DNA of 64,000 nucleotides, from the sequence record phage_1; one strand, written 5' to 3'. The translations under genes and the position numbers were made by a program. Position 1 is the first letter of the stretch, and each line of letters opens with the position of its first letter. This document shows positions 2,141-20,693 of this stretch, one piece after another. The notes under the pieces were generated by a model. That model saw nothing but the letters and a program-made list of their open reading frames with translations. It searched no databases and was not told the DNA's origin.

Positions 2141-2216
2141 AGGAAAGTGACGCAATTGGTAGCGTACCGGTCTCCAAAACCGGCTGTTTAGAGTTCGAGT
2201 CTCTACTTTCCTGCCA
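2141..2216 (+). tRNA. trnW: tRNA-Trp (CCA)
   Basis: Full cloverleaf: acceptor AGGAAAG/CTTTCCT, D stem ACGC/GCGT, anticodon arm CCGGT-CTCCAAA-ACCGG (CCA at 2174-2176), T loop TTCGAGT, encoded 3' CCA. Confidence 0.95.
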
Positions 2217-3300: not shown

Positions 3301-3369
3301 GGCTTTGTAGCTCAGGTAGGTAGAGCAACCTCTTCGAGGAAGGTCGCCGGTTCGAGTCCGGTCAAAGCA
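3301..3369 (+). ncRNA. tRNA-like element with shortened anticodon arm
   Basis: Acceptor GCTTTG/CAAAGC, TA at 8-9, D arm GCTC-AGGTAGGTA-GAGC, variable AGGTC and T arm GCCGG-TTCGAGT-CCGGT are canonical. The anticodon arm is only 13 nt (ACCTCTTCGAGGA) versus 17. No encoded CCA. Confidence 0.75.
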
Positions 3370-3370
3370 A

Positions 3371-16805: not shown

Positions 16806-18659
16806 ATGGTAAAAATCGTTGACTCTAACAACAACGCTCAGCAGAACAACACTCAGACTCAAGACACCGCACCACTGGGCGGTCTGGGCAACGAGACTGT
16901 AAAAGTGCAAACTGCTGTGCCGGGTACTTCTACTGTCAGCCAATTCGATAACGCATTTGGCATCCGCAACATCAGCACCTATGCAATGCACTTCGTCAAC
17001 CTCCTGGACGAGCTGAAGAAAAGCAACGAATACCTCAACGCTTTCCGCTGGGGCACCATCGCCGGCGTGGGTAACGAAATGGGTTCCGCGGCGTATGTCG
17101 CAGGCCAATGGCAGGGCCACTGGCTGTATGGTATCATCTTCTTTGAACGCGGTCAGTCTCTGCGTCTGAAAGAAACTACCAACAACGGCCAGGAAGACTA
17201 CTACACCATCACTGAACTGTTCAACAAAGACGTGCTGGCAGTAGTACAGAAAAACATCATGGAAGCGCATGGTCTGACCAATGCGAACTTCATGATCATC
17301 AACTCCGTACCAGACCTGGGTAAAGTTCTGGATGCTGAGTGGGCACGTACTCTGATGGGTCAGATGATGATGGGCATCTTCGGTCGTATCGCAGGCTACC
17401 TGGGTACGCTGAACCTGCGTAAGCATGACCGTTATCAGGCTGCAGTAATGCCGCTGGAAGATGGTGCGGTTGTGGATGCTAACGGCCACGCACAACGTGC
17501 TGATTTCGCAATCACCGTTGAGCACAGCCCAAGCAACGTATCCGACGCCACTCCGACTCTGCTGGACACCAATCAGGTACAGGTGTATCCGCGTGTATCC
17601 GGTACTGGTTTCGTCAACATGCGTTTCACCGGTCAGAAGCCTGTCGTTAACGGCGTCTACGACCTGAAACAGCTGCAGGCTGAAATCGTAGTAAGTCTGG
17701 TCGATTCTCAAACTGAAGGTGCAATGGCACCGTATGAACGTCAACTGCTGCTGCTGGCTGCATTTGCAGAAATCGCGGCAATCGGTGGCTGGCGTGACCT
17801 GTTTGTGAAACGTCTGAACAAACAAGATCGCAAGTTCTCCCGTGTGGCAGAATACCTGTCCTGGGGTGCTGACGCTCGTCCTGATGTATCCAAAATCGAC
17901 GGTAGCCGTGAAGCTATCGAAGGTTGCCTGGATATGTTCGCACCGCGTGAAGCAGCACTGGTAGTTAGCCATCGTGCCGGTAACGGTCTGGGTGGTCTGT
18001 CTACTATGCTGTCTGAAATTGCGGTCGGTTACGACAACTCTCTGAAACAGCTGCTCGCTATTCTGAATTCCATGTCCCCGCGTGATCAGAACGGCGAAGT
18101 TGTTGCAGCGACCAGCTTCACTGCAGTATTTGCTTCTGCACTGAAAGCACAGCTGGGCGATGCCTTCAATGGTACCATCCATTGCAGCCACATCGTGAAA
18201 GCAGCCGTACCGACTGTTTCCGGTGTTTACACCGGTACTGCACAGAAACGTAGCTTCCAGGATATGGACCTGATTTCCGTTGTTACCAAACTGGGTGATA
18301 ACGCGAACGACGTCTATAGCTACCTGAACGCACAGTCCTACAGCCACCGTGAACTGAACGAGCGTCAACAGCGTATCTACATGCTGAAACTGGCCGCTTC
18401 TCTGTTCGCATCCAAAGCACCGCAAGCTACCGGTGAATCTCTGGATATGGCTATCAACCCGATCTTCGGTAAATGCCTGCTGGACTTCGTCCGTAACAAC
18501 TGCACCTGGTCTATGACTGGTGTAAATGCCTACAACACGATGGCGACCTCTCTGTTCTTCAACAACGGTGGGGAAGACTTCACGCTGTCTGGCAACGGCC
18601 TGTCTGCAAGCGGTTCCGATTTCGGTCTGGGCGTGTCTCTGAGCAACTTCAAACTGTAA
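16806..18659 (+). CDS. chmA: Chimallin (phage nuclear shell protein; phiKZ gp54-like)
   Basis: 617 aa with a low-complexity N/Q-rich N-terminus and strongly biased, highly-expressed codon usage. Sits between the DNA polymerase and the nvRNAP beta-prime N gene, as in Chimalliviridae. Confidence 0.8.
   Translation: MVKIVDSNNNAQQNNTQTQDTAPLGGLGNETVKVQTAVPGTSTVSQFDNAFGIRNISTYAMHFVNLLDELKKSNEYLNAFRWGTIAGVGNEMGSAAYVAGQWQGHWLYGIIFFERGQSLRLKETTNNGQEDYYTITELFNKDVLAVVQKNIMEAHGLTNANFMIINSVPDLGKVLDAEWARTLMGQMMMGIFGRIAGYLGTLNLRKHDRYQAAVMPLEDGAVVDANGHAQRADFAITVEHSPSNVSDATPTLLDTNQVQVYPRVSGTGFVNMRFTGQKPVVNGVYDLKQLQAEIVVSLVDSQTEGAMAPYERQLLLLAAFAEIAAIGGWRDLFVKRLNKQDRKFSRVAEYLSWGADARPDVSKIDGSREAIEGCLDMFAPREAALVVSHRAGNGLGGLSTMLSEIAVGYDNSLKQLLAILNSMSPRDQNGEVVAATSFTAVFASALKAQLGDAFNGTIHCSHIVKAAVPTVSGVYTGTAQKRSFQDMDLISVVTKLGDNANDVYSYLNAQSYSHRELNERQQRIYMLKLAASLFASKAPQATGESLDMAINPIFGKCLLDFVRNNCTWSMTGVNAYNTMATSLFFNNGGEDFTLSGNGLSASGSDFGLGVSLSNFKL
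17675..17732 (+). repeat. 58-bp direct repeat, copy A (inside chmA)
   Basis: GCAGGCTGAAATCGTAGTAAGTCT (24 bp identical to copy B) ... GAAGGTGCAATGGCACCG (18 bp identical). Confidence 0.9.
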
Positions 18660-18675
18660 TCGAATCGGTTACTGA

Positions 18676-18732
18676 GCAGGCTGAAATCGTAGTAAGTCTA
18701 TCGATTCCAAACTTGAAGGTGCAATGGCACCG
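18676..18732 (+). repeat. 57-bp direct repeat, copy B (chmA-RNAP spacer, includes SD and ATG of beta-prime)
   Basis: Near-identical to 17675-17732 apart from a few small indels. Confidence 0.9.
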
Positions 18733-20109
18733 ATTGACAGAATGAGAAAGGTACCAAAATTCTACGGAATATCCGGCCGGTTGGTTAGTCAGGATAACTA
18801 TTTGTCCGATTTGCAAATAGAAGCTGCTGCCAAAGGTATTAAACCACCCACTATTATTAACGATGTCGCCGTTAACGGGGATGCGATCGAGGTTGCTGAA
18901 CTTATCGATCGCATGGTACAGAACAGAATCGTTGACGAAGAACTGAACTCTGCACCGATTTGTAGTTTGGATTGTCCGGCACCGATCGCGCATCGTTACA
19001 ATCTCGGTTGTAAGTGTCCGACGTGTGGCTATGTTGTAACTGAACATCGAATTGAATCCGATGTCTGGTTACGTGCACCTGATGAAATGGGTAACTTCGT
19101 CAACCCACGATTCTGGGCAATGTTCAATGCTTTCTTTAATAGCAAGTTGAAGAAGTTTGAACGTAACAAGGTCACTATCGAACGCGGTAATGACTTGATG
19201 ATGTGGATGATTGACCCGTATTACCGTATAGAAGAACCAGACGGTAAACGCGCACATGCTGTGAAACGTGTATTGGAAGAACATGGTTTCGTTCGTGGCT
19301 TGCGCAATCTGGTTGATAACCACGTTAGTATCTTTAACATCCTTACCACGCCAGAAGCCTGGAAGGAAATCTTCGCACCTAATCGGCATAACGCCGCTGA
19401 AGGTGAACGCTTACGTTTACAATGGAAGGAGCTATTCGAAACGCAACGTCACGCATTCTTTCCAAGACATTTACCGCTAATCTCCTCTAAACTTATCGTT
19501 ACTGAGGAAGGTCGTCGTGGTGTCATGGTAGACCCAGTGTTCACGGGTGCTATTGACGCGGTGAAAAATATCGCGTTGCTCTATACGCGGCGTAAAGCGA
19601 TCGAACCACGTTTTCTGATTAGTCGTGCTTTGAAGGCGAACCGTCAGCTAACGTACTTCCACATGGACTTCCGTCGTGAGTCTATGGAAGGTAAACCGGG
19701 TGACTATCGTGCGAAATTGGGTTCTACCCATATCCCGTTCGGTGGTCGTGCAACCATCTCACCTATCTCAGAACCACACGATGCCTGGAAGTTAAAAGCA
19801 CCGTGGCGTTGGATGGTTGGGTTGATGTCGACCCACATCGAGAACAAACTGCTACGACGGGGTTATTCGTCGCGGCAATGTGAGCGTATCGTTGCAAAAG
19901 CGGCAATGCAGTATGACCCGCTTGTAGACGAAATCTTTAAAGAACTGATTCGTGAATCCCCAGGCGGTCTTGGGATCATGGTCATACCGTTACGTAACCC
20001 AACGCTGGTACAGTTGTCTATTCAAACGCTGTACATCGATGAAGTTGTTACCGATGTTAACCAGTGTTCGCTGCGTATCTCTGACCGTGTGATCAAGATG
20101 GCTAACGGT
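18724..20109 (+). CDS. rpoC: Non-virion RNAP beta-prime N-terminal subunit, exon 1 (phiKZ gp55-like)
   Basis: Zn ribbon CSLDC..CKCPTC, GGRATISP and RNPTL. Ends ..KMANG at the predicted 5' splice site. Confidence 0.85.
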
Positions 20110-20465
20110 TCGAAAAGAGCCCCATCGGACGGGAAACCTCTGATGCGTATTCTCCTGAAATGCTGGGAAACCCTAAAGCGTATCTACCAGAAATGGGGAC
20201 GAAAGTCTGAAACAACAGATACGATGGCCTACGCTAAACAATACTGCTAACGGTTGTGATAATGGGTAATCAGCAGCGAAGCCTCGTGAGAGGAACGTTC
20301 AACGACTATCGCTGAAATGCGAGTAGGGGTCCCAGTGGACTTCGAAGTGGGAGAACACCTAAGGCGATAGCTATGGTGAAGATATAGTCTGTGCCTTATC
20401 GAGAGATAAGGAGGGTGTCTTAGCACACCTGCTGTATACGGAAACGGTATACGATGGACAAACAG
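20110..20465 (+). mobile_element. Group I self-splicing intron, 356 nt, no homing endonuclease
   Basis: P1 GGTTC-GAAAA-GAGCC has a U-G pair at 20109. Conserved elements: P AAATGCTGGGAAA (20158), Q AATCAGCAG (20268), R GTTCAACGACTA (20297), S GAAGATATAGTCT (20378). P7 GACTAT/ATAGTC, P9 CCTTATC-GAGA-GATAAGG, terminal G at 20465. Splicing restores NGDFDGD in frame. Confidence 0.92.
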
Positions 20466-20693
20466 GATTTCGATGGTGACCAGTTCCAGGTACGTTTGCC
20501 AGTCGATGAAACTGAGATGAAGTTGGCGCTCCAATTCCGTCCAGATAACGGCTTTATGTCTTCTACTGATGTGGACCGCGTAGAACACGGCATGGTTTTA
20601 CATAACGAGCTAATCAGTATGCAGAACCAGTTCCTTATTGAAGCAGATGAGGATGATGAAGAAGGCATTCCGTTGGAAGCGGTGATGGGCTAA
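20466..20693 (+). CDS. rpoC: Non-virion RNAP beta-prime N-terminal subunit, exon 2 (spliced product 537 aa)
   Basis: Begins with DFDGDQ, the catalytic aspartate triad. Confidence 0.88.
   Translation, partial: DFDGDQFQVRLPVDETEMKLALQFRPDNGFMSSTDVDRVEHGMVLHNELISMQNQFLIEADEDDEEGIPLEAVMG

What the first reader, a model, noticed from the sequence alone, without database searches (positions are those of the whole stretch)
20110..20465. Minimal ORF-less group I intron inside the RNAP catalytic motif
The intron falls between N-G and D-F-D-G-D, so no active nvRNAP can be made without splicing. Unspliced mRNA would give a 508-aa protein lacking the catalytic aspartates. There is no homing endonuclease, unlike the HNH-bearing intron in phiKZ gp55-56.1, so it is either a late-stage intron or mobilised in trans. 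Splicing could act as a gate on the early-to-middle switch (inference). ORF callers mis-annotate this as two genes.
Basis: partly seen in the sequence, partly recalled or inferred. Interest (0 to 1): 0.7.

Follow-up and report, generated by a model that had tools for sequence, protein, structure and literature searches.

The report
Group I intron splitting phage RNA polymerase
A 356-base self-splicing-type (group I) intron with no gene of its own interrupts the catalytic motif of an essential RNA polymerase gene in a jumbo coliphage. It is real and precisely bounded, but it is an ordinary, previously unannotated member of an intron family already known from phiKZ-like phages.

Summary
The window is the first 64 kb of Escherichia phage vB_EcoM_Lh1B, a Seoulvirus related to SPN3US. 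Bases 20110-20465 match Rfam's group I intron model (69.4 bits, E 1.6e-15). SPN3US and at least 20 other close relatives lack exactly these 356 bases. Joining 20109 to 20466 gives a protein that differs from intron-less SPN3US gp23 at one internal residue. That protein is the orthologue of the phiKZ non-virion RNA polymerase subunit gp55/gp56.1.

Twelve homologous introns from five phage groups support the fold by covariation: 87.6% of cells paired against 36-43% in slid controls. The guide sequence in P1 changes together with the exon, and P9.0 changes just before the terminal G, which fixes both splice sites.

The intron has no ORF. Sister phages (Proteus phage 7, SaP7, SPFM1) carry a related intron at the same site with an I-HmuI-like HNH gene in the P1 loop. 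Intron presence does not follow exon phylogeny, and three synonymous changes next to the site mark all intron-bearing alleles. This is a typical mobile-intron polymorphism.

It is not "minimal", and the idea of a splicing gate has no support. It is a new member of a known kind, of modest interest.

The parts
18724..20109 (+). Exon 1 of the nvRNAP beta' N-terminal subunit gene (orthologue of SPN3US gp23 and phiKZ gp55). It ends ...K M A N G. The start codon is either ATG 18724 (longest ORF) or ATG 18742 (GenBank annotation, equivalent to the SPN3US start).
   Evidence: phrog_2987 'RNA polymerase beta subunit', E 8e-180 for the intron-less orthologue.
20110..20465 (+). ORF-less group I intron, 356 nt, subgroup IA-like.
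   Evidence: Rfam 69.4 bits. Exactly these 356 nt are absent from intron-less relatives. Covariation on 12 homologues supports the fold. No internal + strand ORF.
20466..20693 (+). Exon 2. It starts D F D G D Q F Q (the catalytic Mg-binding aspartates) and ends at TAA.
20107..20121 (+). P1 hairpin. GGU|UC (20107-20111) pairs with GAGCC (20117-20121); the loop is GAAAA. U20109-G20119 is the wobble pair at the 5' splice site. GCC (20119-20121) is the internal guide sequence.
   Evidence: Unconstrained MFE fold. The guide covaries with the exon in relatives: GGU|AA/UUGCC, GCU|AA/UUGGC, GAU|AG/CUGUC.
20123..20145 (+). P2 hairpin, CAUCGGAcGG-GAAA-CCUCUGAUG, with a GNRA loop.
   Evidence: 7 of 9 pairs show compensatory changes. 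Rfam had wrongly used part of this helix as P1.
20150..20155 (+). P3 5' strand, UUCUCC. It pairs with 20350-20355.
   Evidence: helix 2: 4 of 6 pairs compensatory, 95.5% of cells paired.
20161..20275 (+). P4-P5 domain. P4 is 20161-20166 with 20270-20275. P5 is 20170-20173 with 20264-20267. P5a is 20179-20185 with 20217-20223. P5b is 20187-20196. P5c is 20197-20208, with an invariant GAAA loop. P5d is 20226-20229 with 20252-20255.
   Evidence: helices 3-8.
20248..20250 (+). In-frame TAA that ends the exon-1 reading frame 46 codons into the intron. It defines the 508-aa unspliced product.
20276..20298 (+). P6/P6a hairpin with a GUGA loop.
20299..20308 (+). J6/7 (UCAAC) and the P7 5' strand GACUA. 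P7 pairs with 20385-20389 and forms a pseudoknot with P3. Including the two preceding bases (20297-20298), the stretch GUUCAACGACUA matches the Rfam core consensus.
   Evidence: alignment. helix 12: 100% paired, one compensatory pair.
20309..20343 (+). P7.1 (20309-20322) and P7.2 (20326-20343). These extra hairpins between P7 and P3' are the hallmark of subgroup IA introns.
   Evidence: (helices 13, 14): 3 of 4 and 5 of 7 pairs compensatory.
20350..20355 (+). P3 3' strand, GGAGAA.
20356..20378 (+). P8/P8a hairpin.
20379..20389 (+). J8/7 (AAGAUA) and the P7 3' strand UAGUC. Including the preceding G (20378) and the following U (20390), GAAGAUAUAGUCU is identical to the Rfam consensus.
20392..20393 (+). 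P9.0 5' strand, UG. It pairs with CA at 20463-20464, just before the terminal G.
   Evidence: The pair covaries: UG/CA here, AC/GU in EL, GU/AC in phiKZ.
20394..20452 (+). P9 (20394-20411, GAGA loop), P9.1 (20414-20429) and P9.2 (20434-20452).
20454..20456 (+). ATG used by GenBank as the start of 'beta subunit 2'. It lies inside the intron, 12 nt before the 3' splice site.
20465..20465 (+). Terminal (omega) G of the intron. The 3' splice site is 20465|20466.

Best explanation
Bases 20110-20465 are a functional group I (subgroup IA-like) intron without an ORF. It lies in the early gene for the beta' N-terminal subunit of the phage's non-virion RNA polymerase.

**Proposed mechanism**
- The pre-mRNA folds into the P1-P9.2 ribozyme.
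- An external guanosine attacks after U20109, which sits in a U-G wobble with guide base G20119.
- The freed exon 1 then attacks after the terminal G20465, which is positioned by P9.0.
- Exons join as GCUAACGGU|GAUUUCGAUGGU. This restores ...KMANG-DFDGDQF... and gives a 531-537 aa subunit carrying the Mg-binding aspartates.

**What is shown and what is inferred**
- Shown in silico: the fold, the splice sites and the restored reading frame.
- Inferred from the family and from the phage's viability: the chemistry itself and splicing in vivo.

**Evolution.** The intron behaves as a selfish mobile element. It belongs to a family that targets the N(A/G)DFDGD codons of this gene across chimalliviruses, and members usually carry an I-HmuI-like HNH-NUMOD endonuclease in an extended P1 loop. 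The Lh1B version either lost that gene or never had it. It persists because imprecise deletion would destroy an essential catalytic site. It could spread with an endonuclease supplied in trans by a co-infecting HNH-intron phage (inference).
For: **The RNA is a group I intron**
- Rfam RF00028 scores 69.4 bits, E 1.6e-15. The J6/7-P7 and J8/7-P7' core stretches match the consensus: J8/7-P7' (GAAGAUAUAGUCU) exactly, J6/7-P7 (GUUCAACGACUA) at all but one weakly conserved position.
- On 12 homologous introns, 87.6% of cells pair, against 36-43% when the partners are slid. 49 of 90 pairs have changes on both sides, against 15-19. The covariation score is 0.406 against about 0.10, and 0 of 500 shuffles reach it.
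- The MFE z-score is -2.7.

**The splice sites**
- The intron-less SPN3US, SPLA1a, SPFM17, SEGD1 and MET_P1 alleles lack exactly these 356 nt.
- The spliced product is collinear with phiKZ gp55/56.1 across ...N(A/G)DFDGDQ....
- The P1 guide covaries with the exon triplet: GGU:GCC, GCU:GGC, GAU:GUC. P9.0 covaries next to the terminal G.
- All intron-bearing alleles end exon 1 in GGT, so they have the U needed at -1. All intron-less alleles end in GGA.

**Mobility**
- Of the 30 best Seoulvirus records, 6 have the ORF-less intron, 3 have a 1404-nt HNH intron at the same site and 21 have none.
- Intron state cuts across the two exon clades. Only positions -6, -3 and 0 co-segregate with the intron.
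- The Raoultella and Klebsiella phage introns are 99.7% identical in the core but differ by a 1065-nt HNH insert in the P1 loop.
- Every endonuclease in this family is HNH plus NUMOD.

**Splicing in vivo, by analogy.** Active nvRNAP purified from phiKZ-infected cells contains a 56-kDa gp55. Its DFDGD motif (residues 417-421) is encoded downstream of the homologous intron (PMC4666361, PMC8287921).
Against: - There is no RNA or protein evidence for Lh1B itself.
- P1 has only three exon base pairs. P10 is weak, at most about 3 bp, and is not conserved among relatives (my inspection data).
- ONT-cappable-seq of phiKZ found no spliced reads for the homologous gp56 intron under the conditions used (PMC10914365). 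Efficient self-splicing in this family is therefore not yet shown at the RNA level.
- The MAFFT alignment is out of register in peripheral helices for the distant members, so the per-helix numbers for P5a, P7.2 and P9.2 are conservative or noisy.
Confidence: 0.92

Rival explanations
1. The intron is a real group I intron but needs help. Efficient splicing would depend on a phage or host protein cofactor, or on conditions inside the phage nucleus, rather than being true self-splicing.
For: - P1 and P10 are short.
- No spliced reads were seen for the homologous phiKZ intron by ONT-cappable-seq (PMC10914365).
- T4 introns are known to depend on translation state (Sandegren and Sjoberg 2007, cited). 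Chimalliviruses uncouple transcription from translation (PMC12908238).
Against: - The complete catalytic core and the peripheral stabilising elements are conserved with covariation. These include GNRA loops L2 and L5c, which are invariant in all 12 sequences.
- Neither the intron nor its relatives encode a maturase-like ORF. The relatives' ORFs are HNH endonucleases.
Confidence: 0.12
2. Splicing is a regulated step that times the appearance of nvRNAP.
For: - nvRNAP subunits are early gene products and the enzyme transcribes late promoters in phiKZ (PMC4666361). Any delay in splicing would therefore delay late transcription.
- The intron sits in the one subunit that carries the catalytic aspartates.
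Against: - Sister phages with nearly identical exons have no intron. SPLA1a and SPFM17 differ from Lh1B at 10-12 of 1581 exon positions.
- Most chimalliviruses lack an intron here.
- The distribution is the patchy one expected of a selfish element.
- No regulatory feature was found.
Confidence: 0.07
3. There is no splicing. The gene is genuinely split, or decaying, and the 508-aa and 79-aa ORFs are made as separate polypeptides, as GenBank annotates them.
For: - Jumbo-phage RNAP genes are naturally split into several polypeptides (PMC7598289).
- GenBank lists two CDS.
Against: - The split would separate N-G from DFDGD inside one beta-hairpin of the catalytic double-psi beta-barrel.
- The 79-aa ORF starts at an ATG inside the ribozyme's 3' tail.
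- The intervening RNA shows strong structure-preserving covariation.
- Intron-less alleles encode one continuous protein.
- The phage is viable and has been propagated (PMC10302289).
Confidence: 0.02

Closest known systems
phiKZ gp55 / gp56 (HNH) / gp56.1 intron, predicted by Mesyanzhinov et al. 2002
   Same: - It interrupts the orthologous gene, the nvRNAP beta' N-terminal subunit that lies next to the nuclear-shell gene.
- It hits Rfam group I at 75.6 bits.
- Its core aligns with the Lh1B intron, including P7.1/P7.2, P9.0 and the terminal G.
- It targets the same NADFDGD codons.
   Different: - The phiKZ intron is 1372 nt and carries an HNH-NUMOD gene in the P1 loop. Lh1B's is 356 nt with a 5-nt P1 loop.
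- Its insertion site is 3 nt upstream, N|ADFDGD.
- It is only about 36% identical to Lh1B in the MAFFT alignment.
HNH-bearing introns of Proteus phage 7, Salmonella phage SaP7 and SPFM1 (same genus)
   Same: - The insertion site is identical, and so is the converted exon tract GCT AAC GGT|.
- The core is 74-78% identical.
- P2 to P9.2 have the same architecture.
   Different: - They are 1404 nt long, with an I-HmuI-like HNH-NUMOD ORF in the P1 loop, which is closed by a 9-bp long-range stem.
- The inner pairs of P1 differ in a compensatory way: AA/UU against UC/GA.
Pseudomonas phage EL gp24-gp26 intron, and the introns of Raoultella phage VB_ZK_P1 and Klebsiella phage phiKp_32
   Same: - They use the same codon boundary (A|D of NADFDGD) in the orthologous gene.
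- The core is homologous.
- VB_ZK_P1's intron also has no ORF (365 nt).
   Different: - EL and phiKp_32 carry HNH genes.
- The Raoultella and Klebsiella phages have a second, unrelated intervening sequence 12 nt downstream.
Phage subgroup IA2 introns (T4 td/nrdB/sunY; SPO1/SP82 DNA polymerase intron with I-HmuI)
   Same: - They are phage group I introns with P7.1/P7.2 that sit in catalytic-site codons of essential enzymes.
- They are mobilised by endonucleases, of the HNH I-HmuI type in SPO1.
- ORF-less variants exist.

This comparison rests on my knowledge of Michel and Westhof 1990 and of Shub and Belfort's work. The review summarises it.
   Different: - The host genes differ: nucleotide metabolism and DNA polymerase.
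- The T4 ORFs sit in P6 or P9 loops, not in P1.
- I made no direct sequence comparison here beyond short BLAST matches to Bacillus phage polymerase introns.
PhiPA3 gp210 intron in a vRNAP beta subunit gene (Birkholz et al. 2024)
   Same: It is a group I intron next to catalytic aspartates of a jumbo-phage RNAP gene. It shows that such elements can matter in competition between phages.
   Different: - It interrupts a different RNAP (the virion enzyme) and a different subunit.
- It carries an active HNH endonuclease. Lh1B's intron has none.

Membership tests
Group I intron (Rfam RF00028) | Covariance-model score above the curated gathering threshold | tested here: met
   69.4 bits against 50, E 1.6e-15, with the full model 1-253 matched.
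Group I intron (Rfam RF00028) | Conserved core helices P3-P8, including the P3/P7 pseudoknot, maintained by compensatory changes | tested here: met
   12 homologues. P3: 4 of 6 pairs compensatory. P7: 100% paired with one compensatory pair. P8: 2 of 4. Whole structure: 87.6% paired against 36-43% slid.
Group I intron (Rfam RF00028) | 5' splice site after a U that forms a U-G wobble in P1 with an internal guide sequence | tested here: met
   U20109-G20119. P1 is GGU|UC/GAGCC. The guide covaries with the exon in relatives. Intron-less alleles have A at this position.
Group I intron (Rfam RF00028) | Terminal G at the 3' splice site, positioned by P9.0 or P10 | tested here: met
   G20465. P9.0 (UG/CA) covaries in EL and phiKZ. 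P10 is weak, so that part is inconclusive.
Group I intron (Rfam RF00028) | Guanosine-binding core: J6/7-P7 and J8/7-P7' consensus | tested here: met
   GUUCAACGACUA and GAAGAUAUAGUCU align to the model consensus with high posterior probability. Most of the columns in both stretches are invariant in the 12-sequence alignment.
Group I intron (Rfam RF00028) | Precise excision restores the host reading frame | tested here: met
   In silico only. The joined exons match intron-less SPN3US gp23 in length (1596 nt), with one internal amino-acid difference.
Group I intron (Rfam RF00028) | GTP-dependent self-splicing | not testable with these tools
   This needs in vitro transcription and splicing, or RT-PCR.
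Subgroup IA (IA2-like) group I introns | Extra helices P7.1 and P7.2 between P7 and P3' | tested here: met
   20309-20322 and 20326-20343. 3 of 4 and 5 of 7 pairs are compensatory. I did not examine other IA2-specific tertiary features.
Mobile (homing) group I intron | Intron-encoded homing endonuclease | tested here: not met
   No + strand ORF of 20 aa or more lies within 20110-20465. No homologue of the Proteus phage 7 HNH was found in Lh1B or in any other Seoulvirus at E <= 1e-10.
Mobile (homing) group I intron | Presence/absence polymorphism at one precise site among near-identical host genes, not following host phylogeny | tested here: met
Mobile (homing) group I intron | Co-conversion of flanking exon sequence | tested here: inconclusive
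   Synonymous changes at -6, -3 and 0 (and at +6 in most) mark all intron-bearing alleles of both intron types. This fits a very short co-conversion tract. It also fits selection for P1 pairing or for resistance to the endonuclease.
Chimallivirus nvRNAP beta'-N 'DFDGD' intron family (phiKZ gp56 type) | Orthologous host gene and homologous ribozyme core | tested here: met
Chimallivirus nvRNAP beta'-N 'DFDGD' intron family (phiKZ gp56 type) | HNH-NUMOD endonuclease in an extended P1 loop | tested here: not met
   The Lh1B P1 loop is 5 nt (GAAAA). The gene is present in phiKZ, EL, phiKp_32, Proteus phage 7, SaP7 and SPFM1.
Intein | In-frame protein-coding insert with a Hint domain and no stop codons | tested here: not met
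   An in-frame TAA lies at 20248-20250. The read-through product has no Pfam domain.

The most novel reading that the evidence does not exclude
The ORF-less intron, together with its three-base converted exon tract, may act as an 'immunity allele'. Seoulvirus populations hold three alleles of the nvRNAP catalytic-site gene:
- an intron-less allele, which would be cleavable;
- an HNH-intron allele, the aggressor;
- an ORF-less intron allele, which would be uncleavable.

On this reading, Lh1B-type phages resist the nicking and marker exclusion that a co-infecting Proteus phage 7- or SaP7-type phage inflicts on intron-less SPN3US-type phages. They could also hitch-hike on that endonuclease to spread. 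This would be a natural counterpart of the PhiPA3 gp210 / PhiKZ interference competition, but at the non-virion polymerase.
Probability: 0.3. Interest if true: 0.55.

Novelty: new member of a known kind. Interest (0 to 1): 0.3.

Why it matters
- **Annotation.** At least six deposited Seoulvirus genomes (Lh1B, EC001, JN03, 1252, SPLA3, SPLA5c) annotate an essential polymerase subunit as truncated pieces. The correct product is one 531-537 aa protein.
- **Biology.** The locus adds a well-resolved natural series: no intron, an ORF-less intron and an HNH intron, all at one codon boundary in phages 97-99% identical. This could be used in laboratory Salmonella or E. coli hosts to study intron homing, endonuclease gain and loss, and interference competition in nucleus-forming phages, where transcription and splicing are separated from translation.
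- **Limit.** It does not change how group I introns or jumbo-phage polymerases are understood.

Tried and rejected
1. **Rfam's own P1** (CAAGAUGGC/GCCCCAUCG, with three non-standard pairs). I rejected it. CCAUC belongs to P2, which covaries in relatives, and the true P1 is GGU|UC/GAGCC.
2. **Crossing constraints in RNAfold.** A constrained fold with both P3 and P7 gave a wrong structure because the two helices form a pseudoknot. I built the structure helix by helix instead.
3. **P10.** UCGAAA (20110-20115) is complementary to UUUCGA in exon 2. This is not conserved in relatives and is not in the usual register, so I left it as unproven.
4. **A full-length covariance model.** I did not attempt one.
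5. **IMG/VR search with gp23.** It returned 7 loci, all intron-less, so it added no new introns.
6. **Is the upstream 617-aa gene (16806-18659) chimallin?** There was no PDB hit and no significant BLASTP match to phiKZ gp54. Only synteny supports the idea.
7. **Promoter and terminator scan.** Nothing exceeded chance near the intron.
8. **A second intron type in the window.** Its conserved motif is absent.
9. **Literature.** No paper in the library mentions an intron in Lh1B or in any Seoulvirus.
Full report
**Identity of the window.** Megablast shows that the window is the first 64 kb of Escherichia phage vB_EcoM_Lh1B (OK428535.1), with the same coordinates. It is a 240-kb Seoulvirus related to SPN3US. 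GenBank annotates two CDS at the locus:
- 'putative DNA-directed RNA polymerase, beta subunit 1' (18742..20250);
- 'beta subunit 2' (20454..20693).

The paper describing the phage does not mention RNA polymerase or introns (PMC10302289).

**Checking the observation.**
- Rfam's group I intron model RF00028 matches 20090-20411 (+) at 69.4 bits against a gathering score of 50, E 1.6e-15. The core stretches J6/7-P7 (GUUCAACGACUA) and J8/7-P7' (GAAGAUAUAGUCU) match the consensus: the second is identical and the first differs at one weakly conserved position.
- It is the only intron hit in the window, even at a permissive threshold.
- The reading frame that starts at 18724 runs past 20109 and stops at TAA 20248-20250, giving 508 aa. 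A 79-aa ORF starts at ATG 20454.
- No + strand ORF of 20 aa or more lies inside 20110-20465.
- The MFE of the 356 nt is 2.7 sd below that of dinucleotide shuffles.

**Exact boundaries from intron-less alleles.**
- SPN3US gp23 (SPN3US_0023) is a single 1596-nt CDS.
- Lh1B 18742-20109 plus 20466-20693 is also 1596 nt. Its translation differs from gp23 at one internal residue, Y/F. The start codon is ATG here and GTG in SPN3US.
- Pairwise BLAST breaks at 20108/20109 and resumes at 20466.
- A deletion shifted by one base (20109-20464) would also keep Gly-Asp. It would, however, place G rather than U at -1 and A rather than G at the intron end.
- Rfam finds no intron in the SPN3US locus.

**What the gene is.**
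- Intron-less gp23 matches PDB 7OGP chain A ('PHIKZ055 ... PHIKZ056.1', the phiKZ non-virion RNA polymerase) at E 5e-39. The alignment runs straight across ...kmaNGDFDGDQf... / ...kapNADFDGDQl.... Weaker matches are to the DPBB region of bacterial beta'.
- PHROGs gives phrog_2987 'RNA polymerase beta subunit', E 8e-180.
- In phiKZ this subunit carries the Mg-binding DFDGD motif at residues 417-421 (PMC8287921). It is an early gene product of an enzyme that transcribes late promoters (PMC4666361).

**Relatives of the intron.** BLAST with the intron alone, followed by inspection of each locus, gave the family below.

| Phages | Intron | Endonuclease gene | Insertion site |
|---|---|---|---|
| EC001, 1252, JN03, SPLA3, SPLA5c | 356 nt, 98-99.7% identical to Lh1B | none | same as Lh1B |
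| Proteus phage 7, SaP7, SPFM1 | 1404 nt, core 74-78% identical | I-HmuI-like HNH-NUMOD ORF between the 5' splice site and the guide sequence | same as Lh1B |
| Raoultella phage VB_ZK_P1 | 365 nt | none | NA\|DFDGD |
| Klebsiella phage phiKp_32 | 1430 nt | HNH ORF | NA\|DFDGD |
| Pseudomonas phage EL | 1417 nt | HNH-NUMOD ORF (gp25) | NA\|DFDGD |
| Vibrio phage 2 TSL-2019, Photobacterium phage PDCC-1 | 392 nt | none | 3 nt downstream, NAD\|FDGD |
| phiKZ | 1372 nt | HNH gp56 | 3 nt upstream, N\|ADFDGD |

- All of these interrupt the orthologous gene.
- Where the neighbouring gene is annotated (phiKZ and Vibrio phage 2 TSL-2019), the intron-bearing gene follows the nuclear-shell gene.
- In every HNH-bearing member the ORF sits in an extended P1 loop that is closed by a long-range stem of 9-12 bp.
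- Most other chimalliviruses have no intron at this position. These include the Erwinia phages, CR5 and 7 IMG/VR contigs.

**Secondary structure.** I aligned the 12 introns from the guide sequence to the terminal G (A1). I then mapped onto the alignment a structure derived helix by helix from Lh1B. It comprises:
- P2;
- P3;
- P4, P5 and P5a-d;
- P6 and P6a;
- P7, as a pseudoknot with P3;
- P7.1 and P7.2;
- P8 and P8a;
- P9, P9.1 and P9.2.

The counts:

| Measure | Observed | Partner slid by 1-3 columns | 500 shuffles reaching the observed value |
|---|---|---|---|
| Cells forming a standard pair | 87.6% | 36-43% | 0 |
| Pairs with a change on both sides (of 90) | 49 | 15-19 | 0 |
| Covariation score | 0.406 | about 0.10 | 0 |

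- P2, P3, P5a, P5c, P5d, P7.1, P7.2, P8 and P9 all show compensatory pairs. P7 has one compensatory pair, and P4 varies only by G-C/G-U wobble changes.
- The GNRA loops of P2 and P5c are invariant.
- P7.1 and P7.2, lying between P7 and P3', place the intron in subgroup IA. That classification rule comes from established knowledge (Michel and Westhof 1990); no tool tested it.
- MAFFT puts some peripheral helices of EL, the Vibrio phage and phiKZ out of register. The figures are therefore conservative.

**Splice sites.** Rfam's proposed P1 uses part of P2 and contains three non-standard pairs, so I rejected it. The unconstrained fold gives P1 = GGU|UC (20107-20111) with GAGCC (20117-20121), and U20109-G20119 as the wobble pair. 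In relatives the guide follows the exon:

| Phage | 5' strand (exon\|intron) | Guide strand |
|---|---|---|
| Lh1B | GGU\|UC | GAGCC |
| Proteus phage 7 | GGU\|AA | UUGCC |
| Raoultella phage, phiKp_32 | GCU\|AA | UUGGC |
| Vibrio phage | GAU\|AG | CUGUC |

- At the 3' end, the two bases before the terminal G pair with J7/9 to form P9.0. This pair also covaries: UG/CA in the Seoulvirus and Raoultella introns, AC/GU in EL, GU/AC in phiKZ.
- I could not establish a convincing P10.

**Population picture.**
- Among the 30 best-matching records, 6 carry the ORF-less intron, 3 carry the HNH intron and 21 carry none.
- Exon sequences of ten phages fall into two backgrounds. Lh1B, SPLA5c, SPLA3, SPLA1a and SPFM17 form one, with MET_P1 nearest to it. 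Proteus phage 7, SaP7, SPN3US and SEGD1 form the other.
- Both backgrounds contain intron-bearing and intron-less members.
- SPFM1 has the Lh1B-group base at the one nearby site that separates the two backgrounds, yet it carries the HNH intron.
- Of 75 variable exon sites, only -6, -3 and 0 co-segregate perfectly with intron presence. These are GCT AAC GGT in intron-bearing alleles against GCA AAT GGA in intron-less ones, and all three changes are synonymous. Position +6 co-segregates partly.
- This is the pattern expected of a mobile intron with a very short co-converted tract. The last change supplies the U needed at the 5' splice site.
- The Raoultella and Klebsiella phage pair shows that the HNH gene can be present or absent in an otherwise 99.7% identical ribozyme. 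An ORF-less form such as Lh1B's could therefore be a clean loss, or a state that existed before the endonuclease gene arrived.
- The Lh1B core is only about 74-78% identical to the HNH form in the same genus. It is not a recent deletion derivative of that particular intron.
- No homologue of that HNH exists elsewhere in Lh1B or in other Seoulviruses at E <= 1e-10. Any mobilisation in trans would have to come from a co-infecting phage.

**Mechanism and its status.**
- Shown in silico: the ribozyme fold, the guide sequence, both splice sites, the restored reading frame and the mobility-type distribution.
- Inferred: that the RNA splices in infected cells. The phage is viable and the subunit is essential. 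In phiKZ, native active nvRNAP contains a 56-kDa gp55 whose DFDGD is encoded downstream of the homologous intron.
- Against: one long-read transcriptome of phiKZ saw no spliced reads for that intron (PMC10914365). RNA-level proof is therefore still missing for the family.

**Comparison with what is known, and novelty.**
- Group I introns in phiKZ-like RNAP genes have been predicted since 2002, and the literature covers several cases. These include phiKZ gp56, gp72 and gp179; EL; 201phi2-1 vRNAP; and PhiPA3 gp210, which has a demonstrated role in competition.
- I found no paper and no GenBank feature that describes the Seoulvirus intron.
- It is a new, unannotated member of a known kind. 'Minimal' is not accurate, because the intron has a large P5 extension plus P7.1, P7.2, P9.1 and P9.2.

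**Verdict.** Its main value is in correcting annotation and in offering a natural three-allele system for homing and competition experiments.

Noticed in passing
L005 2860-3170 (Raoultella phage VB_ZK_P1); L006 2860-3170 (Klebsiella phage phiKp_32); L026 2420-2674, L027 418-674, L028 420-675 (Aeromonas phages ZPAH34, CF8, AhC3_1): A second, unrelated intervening sequence of 255-311 nt sits between DFDG and D (GGT|...G|GAY). In the Raoultella and Klebsiella phages it lies only 12 nt downstream of the family-1 intron, leaving a 12-nt micro-exon GATTTTGACGGT. It has U at -1 and G at its 3' end. RNAalifold on 5 sequences finds 18 compensatory pairs, and the MFE z-score is -3.5. Rfam gives no hit even at E <= 1. 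It is probably a group I subclass that RF00028 misses, but it is unclassified. It is absent from the window.
   Followed up: partly
L004 (LR535901.1, Salmonella phage SPFM1); also SPFM5, 7, 8, 10, 14, 15: These GenBank records are scrambled. The sequence is stored as 60-nt blocks in reverse order, so BLAST returns about 27 pieces. Reversing the block order of L004 restores a normal gene with a 1404-nt HNH intron that is 98.6% identical to that of Proteus phage 7. The CDS annotations on these records are therefore unreliable.
   Followed up: yes
window 16806-18659 (+): A 617-aa 'hypothetical protein' (phrog_8316) lies immediately upstream of the nvRNAP gene. This is the position held by the nuclear-shell protein (chimallin) in phiKZ (gp54) and in Vibrio phage 2 TSL-2019. 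Sequence searches did not confirm homology: there was no PDB hit, and BLASTP against phiKZ gp54 was not significant.
   Followed up: partly
L024 760-1430 (Pseudomonas phage vB_PQ1): The last 90 nt or so of exon 1 (ending ...CCTTACAATGCT) occur twice, on either side of an HNH ORF. This is either an assembly artefact or a duplication made by the endonuclease.
   Followed up: no
window 2141-2216 and 3301-3370 (+): Two tRNA hits. ARAGORN and Rfam both call tRNA-Trp (CCA) at 2141-2216 (63.6 bits). The second is a weaker Rfam-only tRNA match at 3301-3370 (40.9 bits), which ARAGORN does not call.
   Followed up: partly
L003 2930-3934 (Proteus phage 7 intron ORF): The HNH reading frame is open for 333 codons from near intron position 57. 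It may start at a GTG upstream of the annotated 286-aa CDS, and its stop codon lies in the strand that closes the P1 extension.
   Followed up: no
window 20247-20588 (-): A 113-aa antisense ORF spans the intron/exon-2 boundary. It is almost certainly spurious, because it crosses a splice site and overlaps the ribozyme core.
   Followed up: no
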